IMG/VR virus record: IMGVR_UViG_3300017971_000185
Location: 310,001 to 374,000 of that record
Reading direction: 5' to 3' (one strand)
Length of the DNA: 64,000 nucleotides
Part shown: positions 6,490-23,306 of the stretch, piece after piece
Numbering within the stretch: the stretch's first letter is position 1
Layout of the letters: each line of letters opens with the position of its first letter
The notes under the pieces: model-generated
Told to the model about the DNA's origin: nothing
Seen by the model: only the letters and a program-made list of their open reading frames with translations
The model's database searches: none
Position numbers and translations under genes: made by a program

Positions 6490-6691
6490 CAACGGAGTCC
6501 CTCCTTGCGCCGTTGTTCTTGCTCCTCGCAGACGCTCCGAAGCTGGCTCCAATTGCGGATGACGTTGAGATCGTCCAGGGCTTCTTTGGTTTCCTGGGTC
6601 ATCGTGGCTTGGAAAGGCAGCCGATCGTCGTTGCGGAAGCTCTCGCTCGCGTAGTTGAAGGTCGTGATGTTTTGCCGTCTCACACTCTACC

Positions 6692-7120: not shown

Positions 7121-7633
7121 GCAGTCTCTTTACTCCCCTAGCGTGGGGTTGGGAGCAACCTGCGCAACTTCATCCACCAGATGGTCCAGAACCGTAGTTT
7201 GTGGACTACCAGTCCACGTTTGTCCCGTCCTATGATTTTGGCCCAGCCCTTGTCTGTCCAGACGATGGCCCCGTCCTCGAAGAGTTTGTGGGAGGACACC
7301 GGTACTCTGAAGCGGCGTCTATGCATTCTCCTTGCCATGGTGTAGGCTGTGAGGAATGTCCGTTACCTCACTCGTCATCGGGATTGTCGTCGCTGTCGTC
7401 GGGCTTGTGTTCTTCCTTGCTGTCCGATGGCTCCGGGGCTGGCTCGGGGCTGGGGGTGGGCTCATCTTCAGTGTCTCGCGCCCGTGTTCTGATCACCCGC
7501 GCTTTGGGCGGAACCAGGGGCGGACTGGCATCAAGTGAGGCTCTGCTCTTAGCTAGCCGTCCTCGAATGTAGGATCTCGGGCGAACGTTGCGGCTGTAGC
7601 TTGGGGGTCTCATGTACCCCGGCAACGCATACA

Positions 7634-8260
7634 CTAACTATCGTCAGGAGCCGCTGCGATGCGGTAGTTGTCGCTGTTCTTTGGCTTGTGCCTGTCGAGA
7701 AACTCCGCAAACTGTTCGCGCGTGTGTGTTCGTCCGCACTCTCGATCCCAACTACTCAACCTAGCTTGGTAATTTTTCCAGTATTGGTCGAGTTCTTCCT
7801 TGTAGCCTGGAAGATCCGAGATCTCATCTCCCTGAAGCGCTCGGACGATCATCTGCTCCCCGTGTTCGGGGAAGTAGAGGATCTCGTGTTTGGGGTGTTG
7901 CAAGATCTCCTCCAGGTTAGGCCAAGGCCACCATTGGCATGGTAGCTCTCCGCCCCAATCGTCGCTCGTGCCTCCGTTGAGCGCGAACAACCAGCTTTGG
8001 AATTCCTCCAGGTCGAATTTCACGCGAAGCTGCGAGCCGCACTCCGGGCAGTACTCGCTGTCGGCCTTCTTGCAGCAGTCGCGGTATGGCGTTGAGGACT
8101 GGAGAAGCTCATCAGCATACTTGAGGATGAATCCGTGAGCTAGATCCTGAAGGGCATCAATCCCGCGTTCGAATGGAGGACCATGGTTGTCGAAGAACAG
8201 CGTCGCCGTGTGGGCCGACTCCACGTAGCCCATGGTCATACAGATGAGATTGGTTCGCAT
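7634..8260 (-). CDS. hypothetical protein with zinc ribbon (YCPECG)
   Basis: 208-aa ORF. Confidence 0.55.
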   Translation of the reverse strand: MRTNLICMTMGYVESAHTATLFFDNHGPPFERGIDALQDLAHGFILKYADELLQSSTPYRDCCKKADSEYCPECGSQLRVKFDLEEFQSWLFALNGGTSDDWGGELPCQWWPWPNLEEILQHPKHEILYFPEHGEQMIVRALQGDEISDLPGYKEELDQYWKNYQARLSSWDRECGRTHTREQFAEFLDRHKPKNSDNYRIAAAPDDS

Positions 8261-8539
8261 AGGAGAAATCTACCCCACGCGAGCGTACCTGTGAGCCTAC
8301 GAATCTATGGGATGGGGCCCAGCGCCGCGGCGATCACTTCATCCACGTTGTCGTAGGAGAGGTAGAGCGCGTTGTTCTGGTAGGGTACGAGGTACTCGGC
8401 AATCCGACTGGACACTTCCTTGACCATCCGTGCGTGTCCTCTTCGGATGTCCCAGGCCATGAGCTTGATCTCGCCCTCGGTGACAGTGAGCCCATACTTC
8501 TGTTGAATGCCGTCGATGACCTGCTGAGACATGGGGGTC

Positions 8540-8992
8540 CTAGCTGGGGGAAGGGATAGACTCGTTAGGGAAGCAGTGCTGTAGGAGCGGGAGGGGATCG
8601 ATGTTGCGCTCTTTTCTCCAGATACCTACGTGAAGGTGTGAGCCTGTGGTGCGTCCCGAATCTCCCACCGATCCGATGCTCTCACCTGACTTTACTTGTT
8701 CGCCCTTCACGACAGCTATCTGATCCAGGTGGGCATACAAGATCCTGAAGTCGCCTGACTGAATCATGACGTAATTGCCGAATCCGCGGTTTGAGGGGCG
8801 TGTGGCTGTCACTTTTCCGCCCCAGATCGCCCTCACCTCAGTGCCCTTGGGAGCCCCAATGTCCAGGCCCTTGTGCCATCTTCGGCGGTTGCTTGCGATG
8901 GGATCTCTACGCGGCCCCCAAAAAGATGTTATGTGGCCGTCTGTGGGGCAGGAAGGCAACAATTGCAGCCAAAGGAGGATTCCCAGGAACAC
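8540..8992 (-). CDS. M23 family metallopeptidase
   Basis: HKGLD, YAHL and TGSHLH zinc-binding motifs; signal-like N-terminus. Confidence 0.9.
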   Translation of the reverse strand: MFLGILLWLQLLPSCPTDGHITSFWGPRRDPIASNRRRWHKGLDIGAPKGTEVRAIWGGKVTATRPSNRGFGNYVMIQSGDFRILYAHLDQIAVVKGEQVKSGESIGSVGDSGRTTGSHLHVGIWRKERNIDPLPLLQHCFPNESIPSPS

Positions 8993-9057
8993 GTAATCTT
9001 CACTTTCGTCTGGAGAGGTTGTTCACTTTTACTCCCGGTTCGCGTATAAGAGCCTCA

Positions 9058-9771
9058 GTGCATTCAAACTCGCGGGACCAATATCTGCCTTTTCGGAAGG
9101 TGTACGACCTCTACAAGACGATGGTGAGGTATCCTGTGTCGGAAGGTGCGGTCCGGCGTTGGGTCAACCAAGGCAAGATACCGGCGTTCAAGCGAGGTAA
9201 CCGGTGGACGTTCTGCGTCAAGGATCTCGTTCGCTACCACGTGAACAATCTGGGCCAGGGGCCTTCTTACAAGAAGGCTCCCCCGCGCACGACGCGAATT
9301 CGGCCGGTTGCTGATCACGAGCTAGACCCGGTCGAGTGGGAGCCTCACGTCAGGAAGTTTCTCAAGGGACGTACGGTCGTGAGACCACGGCAGATCTGCG
9401 ATCTCGTTGGCGTCGCTCAGGACAGGTTGGGGCCTGAGGTTCGAAACCAGATGGATAGGGTCAAGACGCTGCTCCGGCATCTCGGATGGGAGAGGATGCC
9501 CGAACCCAAGAGCTATGACTGGTCTCCCATTGCGATCGTTCGCAAGGCCAGTGCCAAGAAGCGGGCGCCTGCTCGCACACAGAAACAGATCGAACAACAG
9601 AAACGACAATTGGTACGCCTCCTGAAACGTGAAGGAGGAGCCTATACCGCGGACGAGCTTGCTGAGAAGATGGGGTTGACACGCATTCAGGTTCAACGTC
9701 GTCTTCTTCGTCCGCTGGTCAAGGAAGGCAAAGTCCTCTATATGGGGGCGCAACTCTACTATCACCCCTGA
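9058..9771 (+). CDS. multi-HTH DNA-binding protein (excisionase/MerR-like N-terminus, wHTH C-terminus)
   Basis: VSEGAVRRWVNQGKIPAFKRGNRW; YTADELAEKMGLT...LVKEGKV; start uncertain. Confidence 0.65.
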   Translation: MHSNSRDQYLPFRKVYDLYKTMVRYPVSEGAVRRWVNQGKIPAFKRGNRWTFCVKDLVRYHVNNLGQGPSYKKAPPRTTRIRPVADHELDPVEWEPHVRKFLKGRTVVRPRQICDLVGVAQDRLGPEVRNQMDRVKTLLRHLGWERMPEPKSYDWSPIAIVRKASAKKRAPARTQKQIEQQKRQLVRLLKREGGAYTADELAEKMGLTRIQVQRRLLRPLVKEGKVLYMGAQLYYHP

Positions 9772-9791
9772 CAGACACAGGAACAACAGAC

Positions 9792-10856
9792 ATGCCCAAG
9801 AAGACCAAGAAGCAAAAGACCAAGAAAAAGAAGACTTCCGCCGCGCGAGCCACCAAGGTGAGGAAGCCTCCCAAGAGGAAAACCCCCGGATTGAGCGGTG
9901 CAGAACGAGCCGCCAAGAAACGAGCCGCACGCAAGAAGTTGACTGCGGACAACCGACGCAAGAAGTACGCTAAGCGCACGACGGAGTTTGGCGCACGAAT
10001 CACTCTGACTCGCGCGAAGGGTCTCCTCTCTCTGAATTATGAGGGACAGCGGAACCTCCGTCCCACCAGAGTCGATCAATTCTGTGGCATTCTCCGTCGC
10101 GGGTTGTGGATTGAGTCCGGTGAGCCCATCATCATCGACTGGTTTGGGAACCTGATCAACGGGCAGCATCGGCTGGCTGCCATCGTCAAGACCGGAATCA
10201 CCGCCAAGATCGACATCACCTATGGCGTTCCGCCAAAGGCGTTTGATGTGATCGATACTGGTGCCGTGCGTGCTCTCTACGACATCCTGCCTGTGGAGTT
10301 TCCCAAGCAGGTTTCGGCGCTGTATCGCGTCTACCTGGATTTCAAGACCACCGAGGGAGCGACTTACACCAGCTTTGGTCGACGGAGTGCTTCGGCCTTC
10401 CGTGAGGATCGGACCGGAGCCATCCAGTGGGCGCAGCGGAACGAAAAGCTCTTGACCAAGATCGTCAAGACGTGTCATGTGGACAAGGACGCTCGCGCAT
10501 TGCTCCGTCCTCCCGCAGTGTTTAACGCGTTCTACTTCCTCGTCGCTCGCAAGGCACCCAAGGAAGCGGACACGTTCTTCCGCACTCTGATCGACGGCGT
10601 GGAGTTTGAGTTGAAGGGGCTCGACCCCATCTACCAGCTTCGGCAGAATCTCGTGATGTTCAACGACAAGTACAAGAACAAGCGAGGGACTGCGGTGCCT
10701 CTGTGGATGATCGGAGGCATGCTCATCAAGGCGTGGAATGCCTACATGAAACGTGCGCCCGTTCGCCAGCTTCGGATGATGTCGAGCGAGAAGTGGCCTG
10801 AGATCACGAGTCGGACTACTCGGGCTCGGAAGTCTGCGAGGAAAGCCGCCGCGTAG
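9792..10856 (+). CDS. ParB/Srx-like domain protein with a basic N-terminal tail
   Basis: GEPIIID..GNLINGQHRLAAIV, FDVIDTGAVR. Confidence 0.7.
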   Translation: MPKKTKKQKTKKKKTSAARATKVRKPPKRKTPGLSGAERAAKKRAARKKLTADNRRKKYAKRTTEFGARITLTRAKGLLSLNYEGQRNLRPTRVDQFCGILRRGLWIESGEPIIIDWFGNLINGQHRLAAIVKTGITAKIDITYGVPPKAFDVIDTGAVRALYDILPVEFPKQVSALYRVYLDFKTTEGATYTSFGRRSASAFREDRTGAIQWAQRNEKLLTKIVKTCHVDKDARALLRPPAVFNAFYFLVARKAPKEADTFFRTLIDGVEFELKGLDPIYQLRQNLVMFNDKYKNKRGTAVPLWMIGGMLIKAWNAYMKRAPVRQLRMMSSEKWPEITSRTTRARKSARKAAA

Positions 10857-11529
10857 GCACGTCGATCTCGCCTGAGATCGGGGCCAAGCACGGGGCACCC
10901 TTCGGCCGCATCTTGAGCGGCCCCAGGAGCCGTTTTCCGATCAGGACGGCGGCTTCGATGTCGCCAATGTGGAGCGCCTTCTGGAGCGCCAGAGACGGAT
11001 CTACCTGTCCGTTGGTTCTAGTCAGAACGAGCAAGTCGGCTATGCGCTGCCGGACAGGTGGCTCACGTCTCCAGAAGGATCGTGCGGAGCCACGCATCAT
11101 GTCAGCCACTTGAAGATGGCTGGGTAGGTTCCGTCGTTGGGGAAGAGAAAGCAGAATCTCACGTTGGTGAACGTGCCTGTCAGAGTGCGGCCCCATTGGT
11201 CTCGACAGGTCACTGTGGAAATCATCGTGCCCTCGATCCAGTAGTTGCCGTCTTCGCAGAATCCTGAGTGTGCGGCATGACCCGCAAAGCTCGTGTAGGA
11301 GATATCCGTCCGCACGTTGTCGCCGGGTTCTCCAATCCTCGCAAACCACTGCGCCTCTTGGAGATAGAAGTCTCCGGTTTTGATGATCTGTTCGGCCGTC
11401 GTAAACGCGTGTTGGTGGCGATACGTGATCGGAGTGGGTGGGTGCGGTGTCATGTTTCCCTCGACTGCGGACGCACCACGGCTGTCGGAGAGAGAAAGAT
11501 CTCCGTCGCGAACCCAGACAACTGACTAC

Positions 11530-11739
11530 CTACTTCTTCTCCTCGGCCTTCTTTTCGTCGGCCTTTTTCTCCTCAGCTTTTGCCTCCGGCTTCGCGTCGG
11601 CCTTCTTCTCCTCGGCCTTCTCTTCGGCCTTTGCCTCAGCTTTTGCGTCGGCTTTTTCGTCAGCCTTTTTCTCTTCCTTGGCCGTCTCGGGACAACCCGC
11701 GAGCAGCAGTGTGAACAGGGCTACTGTGGTCTTGCGCAT
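11530..11739 (-). CDS. small Lys/Ala/Glu-repeat lipoprotein
   Basis: Lipobox LLAGC followed by KAEEK-type repeats. Confidence 0.7.
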   Translation of the reverse strand: MRKTTVALFTLLLAGCPETAKEEKKADEKADAKAEAKAEEKAEEKKADAKPEAKAEEKKADEKKAEEKK

Positions 11740-11826
11740 GATTTGCTCCTGAGTGGGGGGATACTATAGCCTACCCACCGTACCGCACAAAACTGGCGCT
11801 ATCTCGTCTATCTCTGACCCTTTCCC

Positions 11827-12123
11827 ATGATGAAGTGCAGGTACTACACACTAGCCCTTGCTCTATCGTTCGGCATTCCCGGATGCTCAACTAGCGACGA
11901 TGACGACGATGGAGGCACTGGAGAAACCGGTTCGGAAACAGGCTCGGAGACCGAAACCCCGACCAACGACGGAACGGGAACCCCGACCAACGACGGAACG
12001 GGAACCCCGACCGATGACGGGACAGAGACTCCGACCGATGACGGGACAGAGACCAACACGCCGACCGACGGAACGGAGACCAACACCCCGACTGACGGAA
12101 CGCCGACAGGCAGCGGTAGTTGA
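11827..12123 (+). CDS. small acidic lipoprotein with TPT(N/D)DGT repeats
   Basis: Signal peptide ending PGC; 24-nt tandem repeats. Confidence 0.65.
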   Translation: MMKCRYYTLALALSFGIPGCSTSDDDDDGGTGETGSETGSETETPTNDGTGTPTNDGTGTPTDDGTETPTDDGTETNTPTDGTETNTPTDGTPTGSGS

Positions 12124-12304
12124 GGTTAGCGACAGCGCCGCTTGCTGAGCAGAACGTGGCGGTATGCCCAGAGAACACTGAGCACCGAATTGCGGCCAGG
12201 ATCTCGGGGCAAATGCAGTTTCCGTGAGAGAGTAGCCTCTCTTGCGAGATCGATGGGAAAGTACATTCAGCGTGGTGCTGTGCCTATAATTGTTCTCTGA
12301 TTGA

Positions 12305-12709
12305 GTGTCCGGGAAGCGCAAGCCTAGCGAGTACGGGTTGCATGGAAGAATTCAGCACTCGGTGACTCGCGTGCAGCCCGGAGCGCCTTCGGCGCAGATT
12401 CACGACGTTACGCCCATTCAGCCGATCGTGATCCAGGTGCCGCGCGAGCGCGAGCCTTCGGGGCCGAAAAATTCGCATCATCGAGGACCAGAGTGGTGGT
12501 TTGTGGGGGTTGTGGTCCTGATAGCGGTCATTTTGTCGGGATCGATCTCGGTATATGTTGCATCGCAATTCCTAGATGAGTACTCCAGTCGCATCGAGCA
12601 ACTGGACCAGAAGATCGAGGAGCTGGACCGCAAGATTCAATTGCACGACATGACTCTCACCCGGATCGAGGCCCAGGTTGAACATCTCAACGAACGTCGA
12701 AACCGTTAG
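12305..12709 (+). CDS. membrane-anchored coiled-coil protein
   Basis: One transmembrane segment followed by heptad repeats. Confidence 0.5.
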   Translation: MSGKRKPSEYGLHGRIQHSVTRVQPGAPSAQIHDVTPIQPIVIQVPREREPSGPKNSHHRGPEWWFVGVVVLIAVILSGSISVYVASQFLDEYSSRIEQLDQKIEELDRKIQLHDMTLTRIEAQVEHLNERRNR

Positions 12710-13296
12710 TCCGTGTCCTCGTTGCGGATCTGTGGACTACACACGCAAGCTGGGTTTGGTCATCGCCGGAACGTCGGTCACTGTGTGTAACCTCTGTGCG
12801 CCCTCTGAAATCAAGATCCCTCTGGAAGTCAAAGAGCAAGACATGACCGTGTCCACGGGTGTCTTTCATGCTCGTCTAGATTGGGAGCACGACAACCCGA
12901 TTCGATCGACTTCGTGGGAGCGTCCTGTCTGGCGAAGGATCGTCAACTGGCTCGGGCTTCCGCTGCACCAGATCTAGTCGCGGCTCGGTAAGTCTTTGGG
13001 TCCGAGCGGTTGCGTGATCGCGTTGGGATCCACGTCGTCGTCGTCGTCGTCGCCTCCGCCGACTTCACCAATTGAGAGATTGAAGCCCTCGGATGCGGAG
13101 ATCCTTTGGATGACCAGCGGCGGTAGATCGAACATCTCGACAAGCTCACAGACCGTGTAGCGCTTGTCGCCCACGTCCCAGGAGCGTAGCTCGCGCAGAA
13201 GCCGATCGATCTTGGCTTTGGTGTCCGCATCCATGGGCTCTCTAGAGGGGAATTATAGGCGCGTGAGGCGGTTTTGGCGCGAGGCCCGCGCCAAAA

Positions 13297-13327
13297 TGTA
13301 AACTTCTTGGAGGAATCCGCGTAGAGG
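13297..13327 (+). promoter_or_regulatory. recurrent phage promoter TGTAAACTT-N12-CGCGTAGAGG (ECF-sigma-like)
   Basis: Near-identical copies at 42247, 61162 and 41516, each upstream of an ORF. Confidence 0.7.
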
Positions 13328-13340
13328 GGTTGGAGAGCAA

Positions 13341-14087
13341 ATGGCACGCAAAGCAACAGCACTTACCAAGCCCGATCTCGACGTTCTTGCACTTCCCGAG
13401 GATGTCACCCTTCTTCCCGACAACAGCACGCACCAGCATCGCTTCGACTTCACATCATCGAGCGGTCGCGTCTATCGGGTCGCGCAGCGGAAGTACAACC
13501 CCAAGACTGGCAAGGGCGGCTGGTGGGCTTGCTCGTGCCCGAGTTTCATTCACGGCCGCAAGGGCTCGAAGGACTGCAAGCACCTTCGTGACTTCGGTCT
13601 CCCCGGCAATCACGAGCGTTTCGAGATTGGCGAGATCTCCGTGGGCGCACTCGACGGCGAAGTGGGCGCAACCACGATGAGGGACTCCGAGCGGGCCGGT
13701 CGCAAGTCGGCACAGAAGACTCAACTTCGCGCAATCGCTGGCGGCGAAGGCAAGGTCGTGGACCCGTCGAGCGGCGCGGCAGATCTCAGCCTGCTCATCA
13801 CCGATCCAAACACGTACTCACTTCGGGATGAGATCAAGAAGCTGGGTGGCCGACCCCGTTACCAAAATAGCAAGTTTCAGGGCTGGCTCATGCCGAACGC
13901 AGCGGCCAAGGCCAAGGTCGAGGCCCTTTTGGCAGAGTCGTCCAAGGCGGCTGCCCCGAAGGCTGAATCCAAGGCACTCCCGGCTGTGAAGCCGACCAAC
14001 GTCGAAATGAAGAACGGCCAGATCGTCGTGACCTTCGATGCGAAGGACCAGGCGGCGGTGTTCGCCCTCCTGAGCAAGATCTCCTAG
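13341..14087 (+). CDS. SWIM zinc-finger protein
   Basis: WACSCPSF...DCKHL. Confidence 0.7.
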   Translation: MARKATALTKPDLDVLALPEDVTLLPDNSTHQHRFDFTSSSGRVYRVAQRKYNPKTGKGGWWACSCPSFIHGRKGSKDCKHLRDFGLPGNHERFEIGEISVGALDGEVGATTMRDSERAGRKSAQKTQLRAIAGGEGKVVDPSSGAADLSLLITDPNTYSLRDEIKKLGGRPRYQNSKFQGWLMPNAAAKAKVEALLAESSKAAAPKAESKALPAVKPTNVEMKNGQIVVTFDAKDQAAVFALLSKIS

Positions 14088-14310
14088 CGTCTGTGCTAAC
14101 CTCCCCCCGGCCCGAGTCAATGGTGGCTCAGGCCGGGTTAACTTTTTCTCTGATCTCGCGTATATGACTCCCGCAGGCACACTAGCTCGTGGTAGCTGTC
14201 AGGACCCAATGCTTGGAGGTCGCAAAGCTGCGGCGCGACAACGCAAGGCGATAGCAGGCTTGTTTGGGCTGGAGCTTGCTTCCTGATCGTTTCCGCTGTA
14301 CACCTGGGGA

Positions 14311-14653
14311 TCGGTCGAGAGGATGAGGAGATCGCAGCCGCAAGGCTGAGGAAAGTCCGGGCTCCGTAGAGCAGCGTGCTTGGGAAATCCAAGTCGGGGC
14401 GACCCGCAGGAAAGTGCCGCAGAAAGCAAACCGCCGATGGCCTTCGGGCACAGGCAAGGGTGAAAGGGTGGGGTAAGAGCCCACCGGGTTCCTGGCGACA
14501 GGGATCGCATGGTAAACCCCACGCGGAGCAAGACAAACAGAGAGCGCTGAAGTTGCTCGCCTAGCTCTCGGGTTGTCGCAAAGATGAATGATCGCCACCT
14601 GGCAAGGGCAACCGACCCAGGGACAGAACCCGGCTTACGACCCTCTCGGCCGA
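14311..14653 (+). ncRNA. rnpB: RNase P RNA (bacterial type A)
   Basis: GAGGAAAGTCCGGGCTCC, GGAAAGTGCCGCAGAAA, GGTAAACCCCAC..GGAGCAAG and ACAGAACCCGGCTTA; P1 TCGGTCGAGAGG/CCTCTCGGCCGA. Confidence 0.95.
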
Positions 14654-14749
14654 TTATTTTCCGTAGCGGTTCAAAAACGGAGCGCTCGCTATACGACTTC
14701 AGCGGCTCTTGGAAGAAAACGGTGTCGGCATTGGTCCGGGGGAATCGCC

Positions 14750-15256
14750 CTAGGACCCGGTGCTTCCGAATCCTCCCTTGCCTCGCTCTGTTTCGGGCAA
14801 CTCTTCAACTTGACGAACACCCCTCGGGGTGGCGACGGCAGCGATGACAAGCTGAGCGATGCGGTCTCCATGCTTGACTGAAAACCCGACGTTGCTGTGG
14901 TTGATCAGAATGACGCCGACTTCTCCTCTGTAGTCCGCGTCGATTGTTCCTGGCGCATTGAGCACTGTGATCTTGTGCTTGAGCGCTAACCCTGACCGCG
15001 GGCGTATTTGTGCTTCAAAGCCAGGCGGGAGAGCCATGGCTATTCCGGTGGGTATGAGTCCTGTCGCGCCCGGAGAGATGATGCAATCCTCGCAGCAGGC
15101 GAACAAGTCTAGCCCGGCCGCATTCGGGCTCATTCGTTTCGGGAGAATGGCTGCGTCGTTGAGCTTCTTGAAAAGGACATTCCAAGAGCCGTCATCGTTG
15201 TAGAATTCGCTACCGAGCATGACTGTATATACTCCGGTCGTTTGGGGTATAGGCAC
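14750..15256 (-). CDS. dut: dUTP diphosphatase
   Basis: AGLDL, RSGLA, GTIDADYRGE, RIAQL and RGKGGFGSTG motifs. Confidence 0.95.
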   Translation of the reverse strand: MPIPQTTGVYTVMLGSEFYNDDGSWNVLFKKLNDAAILPKRMSPNAAGLDLFACCEDCIISPGATGLIPTGIAMALPPGFEAQIRPRSGLALKHKITVLNAPGTIDADYRGEVGVILINHSNVGFSVKHGDRIAQLVIAAVATPRGVRQVEELPETERGKGGFGSTGS

Positions 15257-15574
15257 CCATGCGGCAGCCTCTATTTCAGGCCAAGCTGGCGCGCGTTCCT
15301 ACGCTGCTCACGGCTCAGCGGTTTCTGGCTGATCTCTTCGACTACGAACCGGATGAGATGTTTGCAGCGTTGATGTCTGGCGTGGGAGCGCAGCCGTTGC
15401 ATTCTTGGCCTGGCTGGGTCCCAAGGGTCTCGGGTTGGGAGAGTGTTGAGGTTGCCTACGATGAGTTTCGGTTTGTGAGAGCCGACCTGGAGATTCGGGT
15501 AGCCTATGATCGTGGTGAACGGACCTGGACGATCGTGGGTACTCTGTTTGGGGATTTGCCGTGGGTGGTAGTGG

Positions 15575-16090
15575 ATGGCTAGGCCGACCAAAATCATCTC
15601 TGGAGGGCAAACGGGTGTTGATCGTGGCGCGCTCGATGCCGCCATGGATTTGGGCATCGACCATGGTGGCTGGTGTCCGCCAGAACGATACGCCGAGGAC
15701 GGCCGCATCCCTGAGCACTACGACGTAGAGGAAGTGTCAACAGACCACTTCATCGACCACGGATACGACTATGGAGACTACAGGGAGCACTACCGTCTCA
15801 GGACGATGCTGAATGTCAAGACTGCGGACGCGACCCTGATCTTGACACAGGGGCCAGGTAAGCTGACTCCGGGCACGCGATTGACGCTCACCTTCGTGCG
15901 GGGCGCAGGAAAGCCATGCCTCATGCTCCCCTTCGCAGACGAGGATGCCCCGTGGCGTATCAAAACTTGGGTCGAGGATCAACAGATTACGTGCCTGAAT
16001 GTCGCTGGCCCCCGAGAGAGCAAGATTTCGGGCATTCAGGAGAAGACGCGGAGTCTTCTGATGAAGGCTTTTTCTGGCTCCGGCGGGTAG
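15575..16090 (+). CDS. SLOG-superfamily protein (putative molybdenum-carrier family)
   Basis: IISGGQTGVDRGALD, RT..NV..ADATL, LNVAGPRES. Confidence 0.8.
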   Translation: MARPTKIISGGQTGVDRGALDAAMDLGIDHGGWCPPERYAEDGRIPEHYDVEEVSTDHFIDHGYDYGDYREHYRLRTMLNVKTADATLILTQGPGKLTPGTRLTLTFVRGAGKPCLMLPFADEDAPWRIKTWVEDQQITCLNVAGPRESKISGIQEKTRSLLMKAFSGSGG

Positions 16091-16252
16091 GATTGGCGTG
16101 AGCTTGTCAAACCTCCCGTTTAGGGATACAAGGACGCCTGTTCATTTTTGCCTCAAAAGGCGTAAGTAGGAGACAAGCCTTTGTTACACCAAGGTAAGTG
16201 AATCGGAGGCGTCCTAAACGCCGACCAAATCAAACAGGAGAGATAGGAACAC

Positions 16253-16834
16253 ATGCCCGACGACAACTTTGTCCAAGATCTGGAAGATGGCGTTGAGAAG
16301 GATGCTGAAGAACGCAAACGCTCCGACATCCTCAACCGGCTTGCCACGGTGAACCCCACGCTGGAGGATCTCTTCAACGTCTGTCAGAACAGCAAGCTCG
16401 GCGACGTGATGAAGACTTTTACCTTGGACGACCTTGTATCGACGCGCCAGCCGGTCGTTGACGATGATGACGACGATGACGTGTCGGCGCCAGCACCAAG
16501 GAAAAAGCGCGGCAAGAAGAAGGCCGCCAAGAAGACCGCCAAGAAAAAGGTCGCCAAGAAGAAGGTCGCCAAGAAGAAGGCCGCCAAGAAGAAGGTCGCC
16601 AAGAAAGCGCCGAAGACCGGCAAGGCACGCAAGGCTCGTCAAAACTACGATGAGCTAGCCAAGGAAGTTCACGCCTATATGAAGAAGGCTAAGGAGCCCA
16701 TCTCGACTGGTACGATTGTGTCCGAGTTTGGCGTCAGCGGATCGCAGGCGCGCAAGGTGGCTGAGATTCTCGTTGCGGAGAAGAAGGCCAAGCGGCAGGG
16801 CGCGGGACGGGGCACGAAGTACGAGTTGAAGTAG
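16253..16834 (+). CDS. histone H1-like DNA-binding protein with C-terminal wHTH
   Basis: AKKKVAKKK repeats; GAGRGTKY end. Confidence 0.7.
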   Translation: MPDDNFVQDLEDGVEKDAEERKRSDILNRLATVNPTLEDLFNVCQNSKLGDVMKTFTLDDLVSTRQPVVDDDDDDDVSAPAPRKKRGKKKAAKKTAKKKVAKKKVAKKKAAKKKVAKKAPKTGKARKARQNYDELAKEVHAYMKKAKEPISTGTIVSEFGVSGSQARKVAEILVAEKKAKRQGAGRGTKYELK

Positions 16835-16857
16835 CCGCTACACAGCAGATTCAACGA

Positions 16858-16892
16858 GGAAAACCCGGCCAGCGGAGCCGGGTTTTCCGTTT
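16858..16892 (+). terminator. intrinsic terminator
   Basis: GGAAAACCCGGC/GCCGGGTTTTCC hairpin followed by GTTT. Confidence 0.6.
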
Positions 16893-16907
16893 ATAGGTTC
16901 ACCCAAG

Positions 16908-17492
16908 ATGGTGAAACGAGCAGCCTCACTCCTGTTGTGCGCGTGTGCGGTGACGCAAACTCCCTCCACGGCGATTCCCGAGTACAATCGCAAGGAGTGG
17001 AAGCACTGGATCGATGAAGATCGAGACTGCCAGGACACGCGACAGGAAGTGCTGATTGCTGAGTCCGAGATTCCCGTCACCTTCAAGACCGAGCGTCAGT
17101 GCCGGGTCATCTCGGGTCGCTGGGTTGATCCCTACACAAACAAGATGATCACTGATCCGGGGTTGCTCGACATCGATCACGTGGTTGCGCTCCGCGATGC
17201 GCATGATTCGGGCGGCCATGCTTGGGACGCTGACAAGAAACGAGACTTCGCGAACGATCTCTTCGATCCCGCTCATCTGATGGCCGTCGATCGTTCGGTC
17301 AATCGCAGTAAAGGTTCCCGAGGCCCCGATGCATGGTTACCACCAAACCCAGCTTACCGGTGCGAGTACATCCGAAGCTGGGTGGCGATCATGGGGCAGT
17401 GGGATCTGGACATGACGATTCCCGAAGCCACGATGATTGAGTACATGCTCCGCGTCTGTGATTCAGGTTGTGTGCCTCCGTTGCCGCAGTAG
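16908..17492 (+). CDS. secreted HNH-type nuclease (DUF1524-like)
   Basis: DCQDTRQEVL, DIDHVVAL..AH.SG, NRSKG..GPDAWLP. Confidence 0.8.
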   Translation: MVKRAASLLLCACAVTQTPSTAIPEYNRKEWKHWIDEDRDCQDTRQEVLIAESEIPVTFKTERQCRVISGRWVDPYTNKMITDPGLLDIDHVVALRDAHDSGGHAWDADKKRDFANDLFDPAHLMAVDRSVNRSKGSRGPDAWLPPNPAYRCEYIRSWVAIMGQWDLDMTIPEATMIEYMLRVCDSGCVPPLPQ

Positions 17493-17869
17493 AGTTGGTC
17501 ATGCTCATTCCTGACGACGTGAAAGTACTCTGCAAACACTACGAGCAGTATGTTCCGGTGATCAGGGATCTGGTCACCGAGGCCAATGCGATCATCGAGT
17601 CCCAAGGTCTCACCGAGCTTTGGATCGAGGAGTATAGCGAGCCAGAGCCCTCGATGGGGATCACACCGCTCAAGAACGGCCGAGTCGGGGTCATGGTCTG
17701 GGCTCCCGTGATCAAGGAATTCGATCAAGTGCTCGCGTTTCTCCGTCACAAGGACATCGGTCTGTTCCGTGTGCCGGGCGAATCGATCGGTCGTGTCGAT
17801 GGGATCAGGCTGAGTGGCCCTGACTTCATCGTGCTTCGCGATCTCGCAGACATCCTCGGGAAGTTGTAG

Positions 17870-18478
17870 ATGCCGCGTCCGACGAAACTCGTGTTCGTTG
17901 ACCTGGAAACCACCGGGTTCGATGAAAGCTATCACGAGATCATCGAGGTCGCGATCGTTGCTCAGAACAAGATGCCGCTTCTGCATACGAAGGTTCGGCC
18001 AAAGCATCTCGATGAAGCGATGGCGAAAGACCCGGCCGGAACCAAGCAAGCGTTGGAGCTAAACGGCTACAACGAGTTGGAGTGGAAGAACGAACCGACT
18101 TGGGTCGAGATCGCTCCCCGAGTACGAAGTCTCCTGACGGATGTGGTCATCGTCGGGCACCATCCTGGTTTCGATCTTCGCTTCATCAACGCGTGGCTCA
18201 AACGCACCGAGGTCGGGAATGGAGGAATCCCCTACCACGGGATAGACACGGCCACGCTCGCTCACGAGCACTTGATCCCGTGTGGGGCCAAGAGTGTGAG
18301 TCTGGGGGCTACATGCGCGTTTCTCGGCATTTCCAACGTGGGAGCCCACACGGCGCTCTCTGACGCCCTACGCTGCCGGGCCGTCTACTATGCCCTTCTG
18401 CGTGCAGGGCCTCTGAGGCGGCTCTGGTGGCGTCTGGCGGGGCCGTGGAGGCTACGGAGAGCCCATGCTCGACATTGA
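17870..18478 (+). CDS. DnaQ-like DEDDh 3'-5' exonuclease
   Basis: VDLETTG, GH..FD, AHTALSDA. Confidence 0.88.
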   Translation: MPRPTKLVFVDLETTGFDESYHEIIEVAIVAQNKMPLLHTKVRPKHLDEAMAKDPAGTKQALELNGYNELEWKNEPTWVEIAPRVRSLLTDVVIVGHHPGFDLRFINAWLKRTEVGNGGIPYHGIDTATLAHEHLIPCGAKSVSLGATCAFLGISNVGAHTALSDALRCRAVYYALLRAGPLRRLWWRLAGPWRLRRAHARH

Positions 18479-18714
18479 CGCCTGTTTCGACCGGTGGCGC
18501 GCGCGACAAGCGCAGATTGCCCATCTTCTGACGCGGCTGGAGGAAGAGGCCGCGGCTCAGGCGATGCTTCTGGAGGGGTTGCGAACTGTTTGGGTGAAAC
18601 GTGGGTATAGTTTCTCGAAGCTGCGTTTTTCTGCCTATACAACGCAGGAAAGGAGAGACGCGATGTCCAAGATCAAGGTGATTCGCGTCAGCGCCACCGA
18701 ATTCGAGACCGAAG

Positions 18715-19461
18715 ATGGCAAGGTCTTCCCCCACCCGATCCCCTTCCAAGACGGCAAAGTCCCGTCCGTCGAAGAATTCCAGGCGATCCACGACCAGTGG
18801 CGGGAAATCTTTCAATCCCAAGGACTCCTCCCAGGAGCGCCTCCTGGGCCCGGGAAAGACCGCTGAGCTTCTCGGCGTCCACATCAGCACTCTCCGCCGA
18901 TGGGACGAAGACGGCACCCTGGAGGCCGTCAGGACACCCGGAGGATGGCGAAAATACCGCCTCTCCGACATCGAAAGGTTCCAAGGCCGAGAATCTCCTG
19001 AACGTGAAAAACAGGAGATTCGGGCGGTCGCCTATTGCCGGGTCAGCAGCCACGACCAGAAACAAAAAGGAGACCTCGAACGCCAGTCAGATCGCGTCGT
19101 CGCCCACGTCGCCCGCCAAGGCTACAAGCTGGTGGACGCACTCGAAGAAGTCGGCTCGGGAATGTCGGATACGAGACCGAAGCTCCATCGGCTGTTCAAG
19201 CTAGTGGGCGATCACGAGGTCGATGTCGTGGTCGTCGAGCACAAGGACCGCCTGTGCCGGTTCAATTTCGGTTTCCTCCAAGCGTACTTCCAGAGCCACG
19301 GGGTCGAGGTGGAGTGGATCGAGGATGTGCTCGGTAGAAGCTACGAGGAGGAACTTGTGGAGGACATGCTGTCGTTGATGTCGAGTTTCTCGGCTCGCAT
19401 CTACGGCAAGCGCAGCGCGGAGAACCGTCGCAAGAAACGAAAGAAGGAGAAAGCAGCATGA
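18715..19461 (+). CDS. tnpA: IS607 serine-recombinase transposase
   Basis: MerR-like HTH (LGVHISTLRRWD), YCRVSSHDQ, DRLCRF, ELVEDM..SFSARIYG. Confidence 0.92.
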   Translation: MARSSPTRSPSKTAKSRPSKNSRRSTTSGGKSFNPKDSSQERLLGPGKTAELLGVHISTLRRWDEDGTLEAVRTPGGWRKYRLSDIERFQGRESPEREKQEIRAVAYCRVSSHDQKQKGDLERQSDRVVAHVARQGYKLVDALEEVGSGMSDTRPKLHRLFKLVGDHEVDVVVVEHKDRLCRFNFGFLQAYFQSHGVEVEWIEDVLGRSYEEELVEDMLSLMSSFSARIYGKRSAENRRKKRKKEKAA

Positions 19462-19973
19462 CTCCAGCACAGAAGATTCTGAAAGAGATCAAGGAACAAG
19501 GCGTCATCAGGAGACTCAATGTCATCGTGAAATGCGACGGCCCATGGTCTCCTGTGCGAGTGTCCGGGACCGTGCTCCAGTGGGTCACGCACGAGGTAGC
19601 TGAGGTGTGTCGTCAGGACACCGACGAATTGGGTTACGCTTTCCTCGCACCAACCCGCGATGGGGGAGGCTGGTGGTGGCGACGGTGGGACGAGGAAACG
19701 AAGTCCAAGTTGAGGGCCGCTGCGGAACACGGGTTCCGCGTCCAGATCAACCGGGAACTGGGGTGCCTGGAATTCCGTGCTGTCGAGAAAGCTCAGGAGC
19801 AGGCCCTCCGGGATCTGAAAGACCGCAACGAACGTGAAATGCTTCTTCGCATGAGAGGTGAGAAGCTTTTCGGGAAGATCGCCGAGGAACTCAACGTGTT
19901 CTTCCCGGAGGAACGCACCAGGGAGACGTGGGTGCAGATCTGCGTTGCTCTCGCTCTCGCGGAAGGGAAATGA
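19458..19973 (+). CDS. hypothetical cargo protein inside the IS607 element
   Basis: ATGA overlap with tnpA. Confidence 0.55.
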   Translation: MTPAQKILKEIKEQGVIRRLNVIVKCDGPWSPVRVSGTVLQWVTHEVAEVCRQDTDELGYAFLAPTRDGGGWWWRRWDEETKSKLRAAAEHGFRVQINRELGCLEFRAVEKAQEQALRDLKDRNEREMLLRMRGEKLFGKIAEELNVFFPEERTRETWVQICVALALAEGK

Positions 19974-20181
19974 CAATGACCACCTTCAAAGATCTTGATG
20001 ACGTGCAGCTTCTTCAGGCGCTCCAAGATGCCGAGAACGAGGCACAACGTATTCGGCAGGAGATCCGATTCCGTGGTGTTTCAAGATACGGCTCGCTGTT
20101 TGATGCTGTCGGAGACGCCACCCGTGAAGCACTTGACTGGCCATCCATGATGGAGCGGTCTCGGAAATCTGAACTGGACCG

Positions 20182-21609
20182 ATGAAGAAGTCTCGTCACC
20201 TCTACCTCCACCCGGAGACCAATCCGGGCAAGATTGCCGCCCTGGAGGCCCTTCACGTCGAGTACGTCAGGTACGTGCGCATCTGCGTGCAGATCATGCT
20301 CGACAACCAGAGGCTCTCCCTCAAACGGTCGGAGAAGCAAGTCTTCTTCCCGAAGGCCGAGAACCTCACCAGCCAGATCCAGAAGAACGCCCGAGACCAC
20401 GCCATCCAAATCGTGAGTACGTGGGCCAAGGCCACCTACGAGCGTGCCGTCAAGAAGCACCTCACCCGAGCACACAGGTTCGGCCAACTTTCCCAGGACG
20501 AACGACACGCCCTCTGCACGGTTGGAAAGCACCTGATCTCAGTGCCTTGGAAGCACGTCACCCAGGAGACCATCGACGCCTACTGGGCACTCCTGCTCGA
20601 CCCAGAGGTCTCTGGTAACCAGCCACGGGTGTCCGAACGCATCCCGATGCGGATGTCGGAGAACACATGCACACTGGCCGACACTGACGAGGCCATCCAC
20701 GCTCCCATGTGGATCAAGATTTCCACGCTGGTCAGCCGGAAAGTCGTCTGGCTTCCGCTCGCAGGGAATCCCTACGTCAAGTCGGCCAACGACGTGTCGA
20801 AGGGAGTCCACGCAAGGAAAGACAAGCGTGGGCGCTGGAGGTTCGAGGTTGTTGAACGCAAGGAGTGGATCGTTCCCGAACTTCAACCCGATGCGCCCAG
20901 GATCGGTGTCGATGTCGGCCTGAACGTCGTGGCCGCCACCTCGGATGGCCGGACGTTCGGAGCAAGTCTCAAACCCAAGTTCGACCGCCTCTACGAGCGC
21001 GTCAGGAACCTTCGTGCGAACCGTCAACGACAGGGTTTCAAGGAGAACAGCCCTCGGCTCAACCGGCTCGAAGACAAACTCACCAGGATGGTAAAGACGA
21101 TCACCGGGGAGGTGGCCAACAGGCTCATCAAGAGCGCACCCGAAGGCACGGTTTTCGTGATCGAAGACTTGGACCTGCGTGGGTGCCGTGGTCAGAAGAG
21201 GTTCGCGTACCGGGCCCTGGCCCACAGCTTGGAGACGAAAGCGCCCACCTTGAAGGTGAATCCGGCGTACACGTCTCAGACTTGCCCTTCCTGTGGTTAC
21301 GTCTCTCGACGTAACCGATCAGGAACCGATTTCGTCTGCCGCTCATGTGGCAGGCGTTCTCATGCCGACGTGGTGGGAGGGATCAACCTGCTGAGACGTT
21401 CTCAGGACGAACAGGTTGACCTCAACGATCACCATCGAGACGTGAGGGAGTTGCTGCGAAAACGATACCGGGCCCGTAGGGCCGGGGACAGTTCCGCAGG
21501 ACTCTGCCGAAAGGCACCCGCGCCTGAACCGTCAGGCCGGAGGCTCACTACCGGAGTATCTCCCCCGAGGAGAGGACGGCACAGCCTCGAATCCGATGCT
21601 TACCTTTGA
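20182..21609 (+). CDS. tnpB: TnpB RNA-guided RuvC nuclease
   Basis: GVDVG, IEDL, PAYTSQTCPSCG, CRSCG..HADVVGGIN; catalytic D/E/D intact. Confidence 0.9.
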   Translation: MKKSRHLYLHPETNPGKIAALEALHVEYVRYVRICVQIMLDNQRLSLKRSEKQVFFPKAENLTSQIQKNARDHAIQIVSTWAKATYERAVKKHLTRAHRFGQLSQDERHALCTVGKHLISVPWKHVTQETIDAYWALLLDPEVSGNQPRVSERIPMRMSENTCTLADTDEAIHAPMWIKISTLVSRKVVWLPLAGNPYVKSANDVSKGVHARKDKRGRWRFEVVERKEWIVPELQPDAPRIGVDVGLNVVAATSDGRTFGASLKPKFDRLYERVRNLRANRQRQGFKENSPRLNRLEDKLTRMVKTITGEVANRLIKSAPEGTVFVIEDLDLRGCRGQKRFAYRALAHSLETKAPTLKVNPAYTSQTCPSCGYVSRRNRSGTDFVCRSCGRRSHADVVGGINLLRRSQDEQVDLNDHHRDVRELLRKRYRARRAGDSSAGLCRKAPAPEPSGRRLTTGVSPPRRGRHSLESDAYL

Positions 21610-23277: not shown

Positions 23278-23306
23278 TTGACTTTGGCTCTGTCTGTCCG
23301 TACAAC
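23278..23306 (+). promoter_or_regulatory. sigma70-like promoter of the Pro/Arg/Leu/Tyr tRNA operon
   Basis: TTGACT-N17-TACAAC. Confidence 0.7.

What the first reader, a model, noticed from the sequence alone, without database searches (positions are those of the whole stretch)
14311..14653. Phage-like genome encoding its own RNase P RNA
A complete type A rnpB lies among phage genes (dUTPase, SWIM protein), downstream of a variant of the recurrent phage promoter near 14138-14164. With about 40 tRNAs and leader structures that hide tRNA 5' ends, it could be the processing step of the leader system (inference).
Basis: partly seen in the sequence, partly recalled or inferred. Interest (0 to 1): 0.6.

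Follow-up and report, generated by a model that had tools for sequence, protein, structure and literature searches.

The report
Huge phage encodes RNase P RNA
A 497-kb bacteriophage genome carries an intact gene for the catalytic RNA of RNase P, the ribozyme that trims every tRNA precursor; the gene was captured from the phage's probable myxobacterial host lineage and kept under selection beside 46 phage tRNA genes, so this "cellular-only" housekeeping RNA is now also viral.

Summary
Window 14315-14653 (+) is a full-length bacterial type-A RNase P RNA (RF00010, 247 bits, E 2e-79), and it is the only copy in a 497,194-bp IMG/VR virus record. That record has a large terminase, a major head protein and T4-like replication genes. 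The same locus assembles identically in about 9 independent sediment and seawater studies, so it is not a chimera. A 75-sequence tree nests the gene (support 99) inside the rnpB clade of one myxobacterial order, the one that holds a Nannocystaceae MAG. The phage's EF-Tu and SRP RNA point to the same lineage. The missing P18 and the P19-like hairpin are inherited donor traits. Changes relative to its nearest relatives are truncations of peripheral helices. Substitutions avoid host-invariant positions (7/142 versus 76/191, p=1e-14), which indicates a working ribozyme. The phage has no rnpA, so the RNA most likely pairs with host RnpA to mature phage tRNA precursors. rnpB is sporadic: 22 relatives lack it, yet at least five other viral records of 100-463 kb carry one inside a tRNA array. 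Expression and activity are untested. The "leader system" link is not supported. I found no published report.

The parts
14315..14653 (+). rnpB: type-A RNase P RNA, 339 nt. It has P1-P17 with both P4 strands, the L15 GGU motif, and complementary GAGC/GCUC segments able to form P6. P3 is minimal (5 bp plus a GCAA loop), P18 is absent, and a P19-like hairpin is present.
   Evidence: RF00010 at 247.4 bits, E 2.3e-79, full model. It is identical in the independent assembly L003. It nests in a myxobacterial-order rnpB clade. Purifying selection is shown.
14133..14174 (+). Copy of the phage-wide promoter-like motif (core ACTTT-N12-GCGTATA at 14141-14164). It is the presumed rnpB promoter, about 150 nt upstream of the mature 5' end.
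   Evidence: 13 exact-pattern hits and 42 PWM hits in the genome against 0-1 in shuffles. This copy scores 35.3 bits and has no ORF for 1,095 nt downstream. Promoter function is inferred.
14106..14137 (+). GC-rich hairpin followed by a U-run. It looks like the terminator of the upstream gene and insulates rnpB as its own unit.
   Evidence: RNA fold gives -24.8 kcal/mol with z = -3.2.
14165..14314 (+). Putative 5' leader between the motif and the mature rnpB 5' end. It has no significant structure, and how it would be processed is unknown.
   Evidence: Fold z = -0.5. No sigma-70-like promoter was found in 13800-15400.
13341..14087 (+). Upstream neighbour, a 248-aa protein that may carry a SWIM domain. 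It has its own copy of the motif ending near 13325.
   Evidence: Atlas look-alikes with SWIM score 0.83, a lead only. There are no PHROG or NCBIfam hits.
14750..15256 (-). dUTPase gene, convergent with rnpB.
   Evidence: TIGR00576 at 182.5 bits, E 1e-54, at window 14753-15178 (-).
3692..60226 (+). tRNA island holding 43 plus-strand tRNA genes (20 amino acids are covered once the two tRNA-Gln genes just outside the window are counted). These are the presumed substrates. Eight junctions have spacers of only 1-3 nt, and about 12 of the tRNAs encode CCA.
   Evidence: ARAGORN and Rfam.
39767..39859 (+). Small SRP (4.5S-type) RNA. It is a further candidate RNase P substrate and is also derived from the same host order.
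   Evidence: RF00169 at 57.7 bits. It is 66-82% identical to SRP RNAs of the order against 62% or less elsewhere. RNase P matures pre-SRP RNA (PMC10731613).
24669..25898 (+). Full-length EF-Tu homologue in the same translation island.
   Evidence: TIGR00485 at 540 bits against a cut-off of 522. The nearest relatives are an order-specific divergent EF-Tu paralogue at 64-72% identity.

Best explanation
The 339-nt gene encodes a functional catalytic RNA subunit of RNase P that the phage captured from a chromosome of its host lineage, a myxobacterial order that includes Nannocystaceae. It is probably transcribed from a phage-specific promoter-like element. Because the phage has no RNase P protein gene, the RNA would assemble with the host's RnpA protein. 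The resulting holoenzyme would cut the 5' leaders from the phage's 46 densely packed tRNA precursors. It may also mature the phage SRP RNA and the tRNA-like RNAs. This would raise or safeguard tRNA-maturation capacity during infection. Shown: the gene's identity, its viral location, its donor lineage, its structural integrity and its purifying selection. Inferred: transcription, pairing with host RnpA, and the benefit to the phage.
For: The full-length RF00010 match shows all universally conserved blocks and few non-canonical pairs. The viral context is firm. The locus is identical in an independent 372-kb assembly and in runs from about 9 studies, and contigs there join both phage flanks to rnpB without a single difference. 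The gene nests within one bacterial order's rnpB clade with SH-aLRT 99, at 72-80% identity against 67% or less elsewhere. EF-Tu and SRP RNA come from the same lineage. The phage RNA differs at 7/142 host-invariant columns against 76/191 variable ones (Fisher p = 1e-14). That is no worse than the most divergent cellular member, and the P3 changes are compensatory. P18 loss is a donor trait and is known to be compatible with activity (PMC8457005). The L15 GGU motif is present and about 12 tRNAs encode CCA. Eight tRNA junctions have 1-3-nt spacers that demand endonucleolytic separation. rnpB sits against tRNA genes in seven other viral contigs, at least three of them huge phages with their own terminase. 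A high-scoring copy of the phage motif lies upstream with no ORF after it.
Against: There is no expression evidence, because no RNA run holds the locus. No rnpA is encoded, so function depends on an untested heterologous pairing. P3 is cut to 5 bp and P2 has an A.G mismatch. The motif lies about 150 nt upstream of the mature 5' end, which requires unexplained 5' processing, and no clear terminator follows the gene. All 22 searched relatives, 9 of them at least 90% complete, lack rnpB. The gene is therefore dispensable for this kind of phage. In this phage it is not adjacent to tRNAs; the nearest are about 9 kb away on either side.
Confidence: 0.7

Rival explanations
1. Passenger or decaying pseudogene. 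In this reading a host rnpB was picked up by illegitimate recombination, perhaps with neighbouring mobile DNA, and is carried without function.
For: The gene is sporadic: 22 relatives lack it. An IS607 TnpA/TnpB pair lies 4-7 kb downstream. There is no expression evidence. Peripheral helices are truncated.
Against: Divergence from the donor clade is 20-28%, yet only 5% of host-invariant positions changed against 40% of variable ones (p = 1e-14). Some of the changes are compensatory. All catalytic and substrate-binding blocks are intact. A phage-type upstream motif has been acquired. Other huge phages acquired rnpB from different lineages independently.
Confidence: 0.13
2. Decoy or regulator. 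In this reading the RNA mainly sequesters host RnpA, or competes for substrates, to depress host tRNA maturation. Alternatively it has a changed substrate preference and does not act as a general RNase P.
For: The phage has no rnpA of its own. P3 and P16/17 are remodelled. The phage brings a complete tRNA set plus unusual tRNA-like RNAs.
Against: A pure protein sponge would not need the specificity-domain elements (P10-P14, J11/12-J13/14), the L15 GGU motif or the P4 core. All of these are conserved. The phage's own tRNAs need the same enzyme.
Confidence: 0.1
3. Artefact. In this reading the contig is cellular or a provirus flank, or a bacterial rnpB was mis-joined into the phage assembly.
For: rnpB is normally a cellular marker. 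Assemblies do break inside it because of k-mers shared with bacterial rnpB genes. Every GenBank 'phage' hit to rnpB is a mislabelled or unverified bacterial record.
Against: The gene lies 324 kb into a 497-kb record, with phage genes on both sides. The locus is identical in a second IMG/VR assembly. In an independent seawater study, one contig runs from the upstream phage gene into rnpB and another from rnpB into the downstream genes, both with zero differences. The sequence is at most 80% identical to any sampled bacterial rnpB.
Confidence: 0.02
4. Integration-site remnant. In this reading the phage carries part of rnpB as an attP-type duplicate, as many elements do with tRNA or tmRNA genes.
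For: tRNA-like and small-RNA genes are common integration targets (general knowledge). A serine recombinase (IS607 TnpA) lies nearby.
Against: The gene is complete (model positions 1-367), not a 3' fragment. It is 20-28% diverged from host copies, so it could not restore a host gene by exact duplication. The record is classed linear, not provirus.
Confidence: 0.02

Closest known systems
Chromosomal type-A RNase P RNA of Nannocystaceae-related myxobacteria (Myxococcota, Polyangia)
   Same: Same family (RF00010) and the same lineage-specific architecture. P18 is absent and the same 10-nt insertion forms a P19-like hairpin. Identity is 72-80%, and the phage copy nests inside this clade.
   Different: It is encoded by a virus. 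P3 is reduced to 5 bp plus a GCAA loop, the P12 tip is altered and P16/17 is shortened, giving 339 nt against 369-392 nt in its nearest relatives (the order ranges 336-392). GC is 62% against 66%. It has a phage-type upstream motif and no linked rnpA.
Phage T4 tRNA gene cluster processed by host RNase P (classical system; my own knowledge)
   Same: A phage tRNA cluster is transcribed as multi-tRNA precursors with very short spacers, and RNase P must cut them apart.
   Different: T4 relies wholly on the host enzyme. This phage supplies the catalytic RNA itself and, as far as can be detected, borrows only the protein cofactor.
Translation-related genes of huge phages (tRNAs, tmRNA, aaRS, EF-G/Tu/Ts, ribosomal proteins; Al-Shayeb et al. 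2020, PMC7162821)
   Same: The same phenomenon of very large phages importing parts of the host translation apparatus. This phage also has EF-Tu, 46 tRNAs and a CCA-adding/PcnB-type domain.
   Different: That paper contains no mention of RNase P or rnpB, and six full-text searches found no report of a phage rnpB. An SRP RNA is likewise not mentioned there.
Extra, structurally divergent rnpB copies in Mycobacterium austroafricanum and M. sp. YC-RL4 (Behra et al. 2022, PMC9569102)
   Same: These are accessory RNase P RNA genes with conserved catalytic residues and altered peripheral or S-domain structure. They were proposed to be horizontally acquired.
   Different: They are located in bacterial chromosomes and were not attributed to a phage. 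Here the carrier is a demonstrable phage genome and the donor lineage is identified.
Natural P18-less type-A RNase P RNAs (Aquificales, Chlorobium; PMC8457005 citing Haas 1994 and Marszalkowski 2006)
   Same: A type-A RNA without the L18-P8 strut, known to remain active.
   Different: In this case P18 loss is shared with a third bacterial group, the myxobacterial donor order, which is itself worth noting.

Membership tests
Bacterial RNase P RNA, type A (Rfam RF00010) | Covariance-model score above the curated gathering threshold over the whole model | tested here: met
   247.4 bits against 100, model positions 1-367, not truncated. The whole-genome search gave the same result.
Bacterial RNase P RNA, type A (Rfam RF00010) | Universally conserved core: both strands of the P4 pseudoknot (GAGGAAAGUCCGG... 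/ ACAGAACCCGGCUUA) plus the J5/15 GGAGCAA and J18/2 AGAUGAAUG blocks | tested here: met
   All blocks are present and invariant in the alignment with 13 other RF00010 hits from viral contigs and with the CM consensus.
Bacterial RNase P RNA, type A (Rfam RF00010) | Type-A specificity domain (P10-P12, P13, P14) and P15-P17 with the L15 GGU motif that binds the tRNA 3'-CCA | tested here: met
   P13 and P14 are fully paired, and P15, P16 and GGGU are present. A few non-canonical pairs occur in distal P12 and P17. The complementary GAGC/GCUC segments that could form P6 were read directly from the sequence.
Bacterial RNase P RNA, type A (Rfam RF00010) | Helix P18 (the L18-P8 tertiary strut), typical of the family but not universal | tested here: not met
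   The 24-nt model segment is deleted. The same deletion occurs in the donor-order rnpB. P18 is naturally absent in Aquificales and Chlorobium (PMC8457005). This is therefore not disqualifying.
Bacterial RNase P RNA, type A (Rfam RF00010) | Catalytic activity: site-specific 5' cleavage of pre-tRNA | not testable with these tools
   It needs in-vitro cleavage or complementation assays. Purifying selection is indirect support only.
Bacterial RNase P holoenzyme (RNA plus RnpA) | A cognate rnpA protein gene in the same genome | tested here: not met
   TIGR00188 has no match at E <= 1 in the six-frame search of the 497-kb record, while the control found it in 10 of 14 reference genomes. A host-supplied protein is inferred.
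Tailed huge phage (Caudoviricetes, over 200 kb) | Virion and packaging hallmark genes on the same contig | tested here: met
   Large terminase (phrog_2, 7e-26) and major head protein (phrog_2522, 6e-48). There are about 80 TerL relatives on viral contigs. It is an IMG/VR record with CheckV 94%.
Phage-encoded auxiliary translation genes | Co-location with other translation genes and evidence of retention in the phage | tested here: met
   It sits in the same 66-kb island as 46 tRNAs, EF-Tu and SRP RNA. It is identical in independent assemblies and under purifying selection.

The most novel reading that the evidence does not exclude
The phage RNA could be the core of an orthogonal viral RNase P. 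It would be active alone, or with a phage-encoded cofactor unrelated to RnpA. It would be tuned to the phage's tightly packed tRNA arrays and tRNA-like (Y-RNA-like) transcripts. It would keep tRNA maturation running after the host enzyme is lost, either through phage-induced host shut-off or through a host defence that targets tRNA supply. Repeated independent capture of rnpB into the tRNA arrays of unrelated huge phages would then mark a general viral strategy.
Probability: 0.12. Interest if true: 0.85.

Novelty: new member of a known kind. Interest (0 to 1): 0.62.

Why it matters
RNase P RNA is treated as a universal cellular housekeeping gene, and one held paper uses it as a marker when completing microbial genomes (PMC8172020). 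My own expectation, not tested here, is that a viral-genome curator would read an rnpB hit as cellular contamination. Here it is shown to be a genuine gene under selection in a phage, and to recur in the tRNA arrays of other huge phages. That extends the virus-encoded translation toolkit from tRNAs, factors and tmRNA to the ribozyme that matures tRNAs. It also offers three things:
- A sharp host-prediction handle, because rnpB, SRP RNA and an EF-Tu paralogue all point to one myxobacterial order.
- Natural, streamlined P RNA variants for studying which peripheral helices are dispensable.
- A testable case of a hybrid holoenzyme made of a viral RNA and a host protein.

It also warns that filters which discard rnpB-bearing contigs may remove real huge phages.

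Tried and rejected
1. GenBank phages (INPHARED) by blastn. Six weak hits turned up, and all are mislabelled or unverified. The 'Microcystis phage MaAM05' hit lies among fabI, engB, mtgA and glyS, and a Salmonella record is bacterial. No bona fide deposited phage rnpB was found at this sensitivity.
2. PLSDB plasmids. The 45 hits are mostly chromosome-sized records filed as plasmids. I did not pursue them.
3. rnpA in the phage: none found.
5. EF-Tu in other rnpB-bearing phages: none. The island's contents are therefore lineage-specific.
6. TerL of this phage in the Nannocystaceae MAG: none. The 68-70% EF-Tu hit there is a cellular paralogue, not a binned phage.
7. rnpB in 22 TerL relatives: none. 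rnpB is therefore not a clade-wide core gene.
8. Sigma-70-type promoter and simple terminator scans around rnpB found nothing useful. The leader, the trailer and the whole RNA do not fold better than shuffles by MFE alone, which is usual for large pseudoknotted RNAs.
9. General leader-versus-acceptor pairing across 43 tRNAs is not significant.
10. RNA-seq evidence: no RNA run holds the locus.
11. A RNAalifold consensus of the host clade mis-predicts some long-range pairs. I did not count its 'broken pairs' as evidence and relied on the Rfam alignment instead.
12. The exact-motif scan of IMG/VR gives only a lower bound on the prevalence of viral rnpB.

Full report
**Observation.** Rfam's covariance model for bacterial type-A RNase P RNA (RF00010) matches window 14315-14653 on the + strand. 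The score is 247.4 bits against a gathering score of 100, with E 2.3e-79, and it covers model positions 1-367 without truncation. This is the only such match in the whole record. ARAGORN finds 44 tRNA genes in the window and 46 in the genome. All of them lie between genome positions 310.7 and 376.1 kb, and together they cover all 20 amino acids. Rfam also reports a small SRP RNA at 39767-39859.

**Is it a virus?** The window is bases 310,001-374,000 of a 497,194-bp IMG/VR virus record. The record is linear, CheckV rates it 94% complete, and its GC content is 57.7%. PHROG scans of genes outside the window found:
- a large terminase at genome 444,611-446,782 (phrog_2, 7e-26);
- a major head protein at 470,046-470,918 (phrog_2522, 6e-48);
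- a UvsX-type recombinase, sliding clamp, clamp loader, SbcCD-like nuclease, DnaB helicase, GroEL, DNA methyltransferases and many homing endonucleases.

The terminase has about 80 relatives on viral contigs, many of them 200-620 kb long.

**Is the junction real?**
- A second IMG/VR assembly (372 kb, from another sample) has a 100%-identical terminase and an identical rnpB.
- The 2.75-kb stretch covering the upstream gene, rnpB and the downstream genes is held completely by 11 DNA runs from about 9 studies of sediment and seawater.
- In one seawater study, a 2.5-kb contig runs from the upstream phage gene into rnpB, and a 19.6-kb contig runs from rnpB through the downstream genes. Both show zero differences.
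- Assemblies break only inside the conserved core, where k-mers are shared with bacterial rnpB genes.

A chimera is therefore excluded. No RNA run holds the locus, so expression is untested.

**Anatomy.** Upstream lies a 248-aa gene at 13341-14087 with SWIM-domain look-alikes, which is only a lead. Downstream lies a convergent dUTPase at 14753-15178 on the - strand (TIGR00576, 182.5 bits).

The upstream gene ends in a strong hairpin at 14106-14137 followed by a U-run (-24.8 kcal/mol, z = -3.2). Directly after it sits a copy of a phage-wide motif:
- The core ACTTT-N12-GCGTA(G/T)A occurs 13 times.
- A PWM built from those copies finds 42 sites against 0-1 in shuffles.
- The consensus is GTAAACTTYT-N8-ATCYCGCGTAGAGRGG, and it typically ends 7-24 nt before a start codon.
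- The rnpB copy scores 35.3 bits, ends at 14164, and has no ORF for 1,095 nt. That fits a promoter driving a non-coding RNA.

This copy lies about 150 nt upstream of the mature 5' end, and neither that leader nor the 3' trailer has significant structure. Promoter function and 5' processing are therefore inferred, not shown.

**The RNA itself.**
- It keeps both P4 strands, the J11/12-J13/14 elements, GGAGCAA, AGAUGAAUG and ACAGAACCCGGCUUA.
- P13 and P14 are fully paired. P15 and P16 carry the GGU motif that binds the tRNA 3'-CCA. Complementary GAGC/GCUC segments could form P6.
- P18 is absent, and a short hairpin (P19-like) is inserted before the 3' strand of P4.

**Origin.** I collected rnpB from 33 bacterial genomes across many phyla and from 29 more genomes of one order. 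The order was reached through a MAG titled 'uncultured Nannocystaceae bacterium' (Myxococcota, Polyangia, Nannocystales in NCBI's lineage). The tool does not name the GTDB order.
- The phage RNA is 72-80% identical to every sampled member of that order and 67% or less to everything else.
- In a 75-sequence maximum-likelihood tree it nests inside the order's clade with SH-aLRT 99. Its terminal branch is 0.31, within the range of cellular members.
- The order's own rnpB lacks P18 and has the same insertion. These features were therefore inherited and are not viral inventions. P18 loss is known to be tolerated in Aquificales and Chlorobium (PMC8457005).
- Relative to its nearest relatives, the changes are truncations of peripheral helices: P3 is cut to 5 bp plus a GCAA loop, the P12 tip is altered, and P16/17 is shortened.
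- The result is 339 nt, against 369-392 nt in the nearest relatives and 336-392 nt across the order.

Two further genes give the same answer. The phage EF-Tu (window 24669-25898; TIGR00485, 540 bits) is 64-72% identical to a divergent EF-Tu paralogue found in about half of the order's genomes. It is only 55-60% identical to canonical tuf genes anywhere. The phage SRP RNA is 66-82% identical to the order's SRP RNAs and 62% or less to others. The probable host is therefore a member of this myxobacterial order. My own knowledge of Nannocystaceae as marine and halotolerant myxobacteria fits the sediment and seawater occurrence.

**Is it functional?**
- Against the 30 cellular sequences of the donor order, the phage RNA differs at 7 of 142 invariant columns (5%) and at 76 of 191 variable columns (40%), with Fisher p = 1e-14.
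- The most divergent cellular member also differs at 7 invariant columns.
- Three of the seven phage changes rebuild P3 pairs, for example G-C to A-U.

This is the pattern of purifying selection on a working ribozyme, not of a decaying pseudogene.

The phage encodes no RnpA: TIGR00188 has no match at E <= 1, while the control worked. Bacterial P RNAs need that protein in vivo (established knowledge). The simplest mechanism is therefore a hybrid enzyme of phage RNA and host RnpA, which is plausible because the RNA comes from the host lineage.

The phage has plenty of substrates:
- 46 tRNA genes, with eight junctions of only 1-3 nt between neighbours and about 12 genes encoding CCA;
- an SRP RNA, whose precursor is a classical RNase P substrate (PMC10731613);
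- several tRNA-like units.

A CCA-adding/PcnB-type nucleotidyltransferase domain in a 1,510-aa ORF suggests that the phage also tends tRNA 3' ends.

**Distribution.**
- An exact 18-nt P4 motif occurs in only 19 of 2.9 million IMG/VR contigs, and 15 of these have RF00010 hits.
- The five large records checked (100-463 kb) carry rnpB well inside the contig, and three of them hold a homologue of this phage's terminase at 52%, 33% and 30% identity.
- In seven other viral contigs, those five among them, rnpB abuts tRNA genes, with 0-10 nt to the nearest tRNA in six and 68 nt in one. This suggests co-transcription within tRNA arrays.
- The related phage G003 (TerL 52%) has an rnpB that groups with a different Myxococcota sequence, not with this phage's copy. 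The other viral rnpBs fall elsewhere in the tree.
- All 22 searched TerL relatives lack rnpB, including 9 that are at least 90% complete and 230-620 kb long.

rnpB is therefore a rare accessory gene that has been captured repeatedly, not a clade core gene.

**The 'leader system'.** None of the 43 tRNA leaders is significantly complementary to its own acceptor 5' strand. Only the units at 39003 and 47646 (z < -3) and 39303 (z = -2.9) have leader-trailer helices. The first and the last of these three covary (GAAGCAACC/GGTTGCTTC against GAAGCGACC/GGTCGCTTC). The link between rnpB and a special leader mechanism is thus unsupported. Ordinary pre-tRNA processing is a sufficient rationale.

**Novelty.**
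- Six full-text searches and a reading of the main huge-phage paper found no report of a phage-encoded RNase P RNA.
- The nearest precedent is a pair of extra, divergent rnpB copies in two mycobacterial chromosomes, thought to be horizontally acquired (PMC9569102).
- All GenBank 'phage' hits are mislabelled or unverified bacterial records.

The RNA is a normal member of a known family in a new kind of carrier, so I rate it a new member of a known kind. Interest is moderately high because it crosses the line between cellular and viral gene sets and because it recurs.

**Limits.**
- There are no expression or activity data.
- The prevalence figures are lower bounds, because the scan used an exact motif.
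- The donor order's name rests on one MAG title.
- The tree used a quick search, but the key branch has SH-aLRT 99.

Noticed in passing
window 39767-39859 (+): The phage encodes a small SRP (4.5S-type) RNA (RF00169, 57.7 bits). It is 66-82% identical to SRP RNAs of the same myxobacterial order as rnpB and 62% or less to others. I did not search the phage for Ffh. The huge-phage paper I checked does not mention a phage SRP RNA.
   Followed up: partly
window 24669-25898 (+): A full-length EF-Tu (TIGR00485, 540 bits). Its closest relatives (64-72%) are a third, divergent EF-Tu paralogue present in about 20 of 41 genomes of the donor order, beside their canonical tuf copies at 55-59%. That order-specific EF-Tu paralogue is itself uncharacterised.
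   Followed up: partly
window 32967-33019, 39445-39497, 39649-39701, 57533-57585 (+): Four units share this layout: a T-arm, then a 3' acceptor strand, a 4-5-nt loop, the complementary 5' acceptor strand, and a D-arm. ARAGORN does not call them as tRNAs. Two of them (39445 and 39649) give weak partial matches to the tRNA-like module of YrlA (Y RNA-like, RF02553; 28 and 23 bits against a gathering score of 69). The closed acceptor-like stem covaries between copies.
   Followed up: partly
window 33855-35747 (+): A 630-aa protein that is highly conserved (60-86% identity) across huge-phage contigs, with only a vWA Pfam call. An AlphaFold model (pLDDT 74) has Ro60/TROVE proteins as its best full-length PDB fold matches, including Ro60 of Thermus phage phiLo and D. 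radiodurans Rsr. Foldseek E-values are 5e-8 to 6e-5 but TM-scores are only 0.3-0.47. It is possibly the Ro60-like partner of the Y-RNA-like units.
   Followed up: partly
window 38880-39110 and 39180-39410 (+): Two atypical tRNAs (Ala-cgc with a C1.A72 mismatch, and Met-cat) are each preceded by a conserved ~120-nt leader containing a T-arm-like hairpin. Each is enclosed by a covarying 9-10-bp leader-trailer helix.
   Followed up: partly
whole genome; window copies end at 4541, 9048, 13325, 14164, 26956, 41543, 42275, 61190 (+) and 31878 (-): A phage-wide promoter-like motif, GTAAACTTYT-N8-ATCYCGCGTAGAGRGG. It has 42 copies against 0-1 in shuffles and usually ends 7-24 nt before a start codon, so the mRNAs would have very short leaders. 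The polymerase or sigma factor that reads it is unknown.
   Followed up: partly
window 18715-19458 and 20182-21609 (+): An IS607-family serine transposase (NF033518, 194 bits) and a TnpB RNA-guided nuclease (NF040570, 101 bits) lie 4-7 kb downstream of rnpB. Together they look like a mobile element inside the phage genome.
   Followed up: no
L297 (G000:C1:454428-455138; outside the window): A CCA-adding/PcnB-type nucleotidyltransferase domain (TIGR01942, 80.5 bits) is embedded in a 1,510-aa ORF at genome 450,981-455,513.
   Followed up: no
L005:4030-4350 and L011:4462-4786: Two viral contigs (463 kb with CheckV 100%, and 101 kb) carry sister rnpB genes of 321-325 nt with a strongly reduced specificity domain (about 208 bits). 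Each is flanked within 10 nt by tRNA genes. They may be more derived viral P RNAs than the one studied here.
   Followed up: no
L061 (MW495066.1 111321-119473): The GenBank record 'Microcystis phage MaAM05' (274 kb) has an rnpB-like stretch among fabI, engB, mtgA and glyS. The record looks bacterial rather than phage.
   Followed up: partly
L186:1501-1892 and the other rnpB genes of the donor order: All sampled rnpB genes of this myxobacterial order appear to lack P18 and to share a P19-like insertion. This would be a third bacterial group with natural P18 loss, beside Aquificales and Chlorobium.
   Followed up: partly
window 58101-58173 (+) and 706-781 (-): ARAGORN reports one tRNA with an undetermined two-base anticodon (cc), which Rfam scores at 58.8 bits. 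It also reports a lone minus-strand tRNA-Asn with anticodon ATT that Rfam does not report.
   Followed up: no
L045:16046-19956 (genome 470,046-473,959): The major head protein ORF is only 290 aa and is followed at once by two LAGLIDADG/HNH homing-endonuclease ORFs. The capsid gene may be split by mobile elements.
   Followed up: no
window 5560-6552 (-) and 17870-18478 (+): A spermidine synthase homologue (speE, 189-220 bits, below the equivalog cut-offs) and a DnaQ-like DEDD 3'-5' exonuclease lie in the tRNA island.
   Followed up: no
H14 (NZ_CP022567.1 35722-35907): A 408-kb Rhizobium leguminosarum plasmid record has an rnpB-like stretch (76% identity over 57% of the query). Most other PLSDB hits are chromosome-sized records. 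Whether true plasmids carry rnpB was not examined.
   Followed up: no
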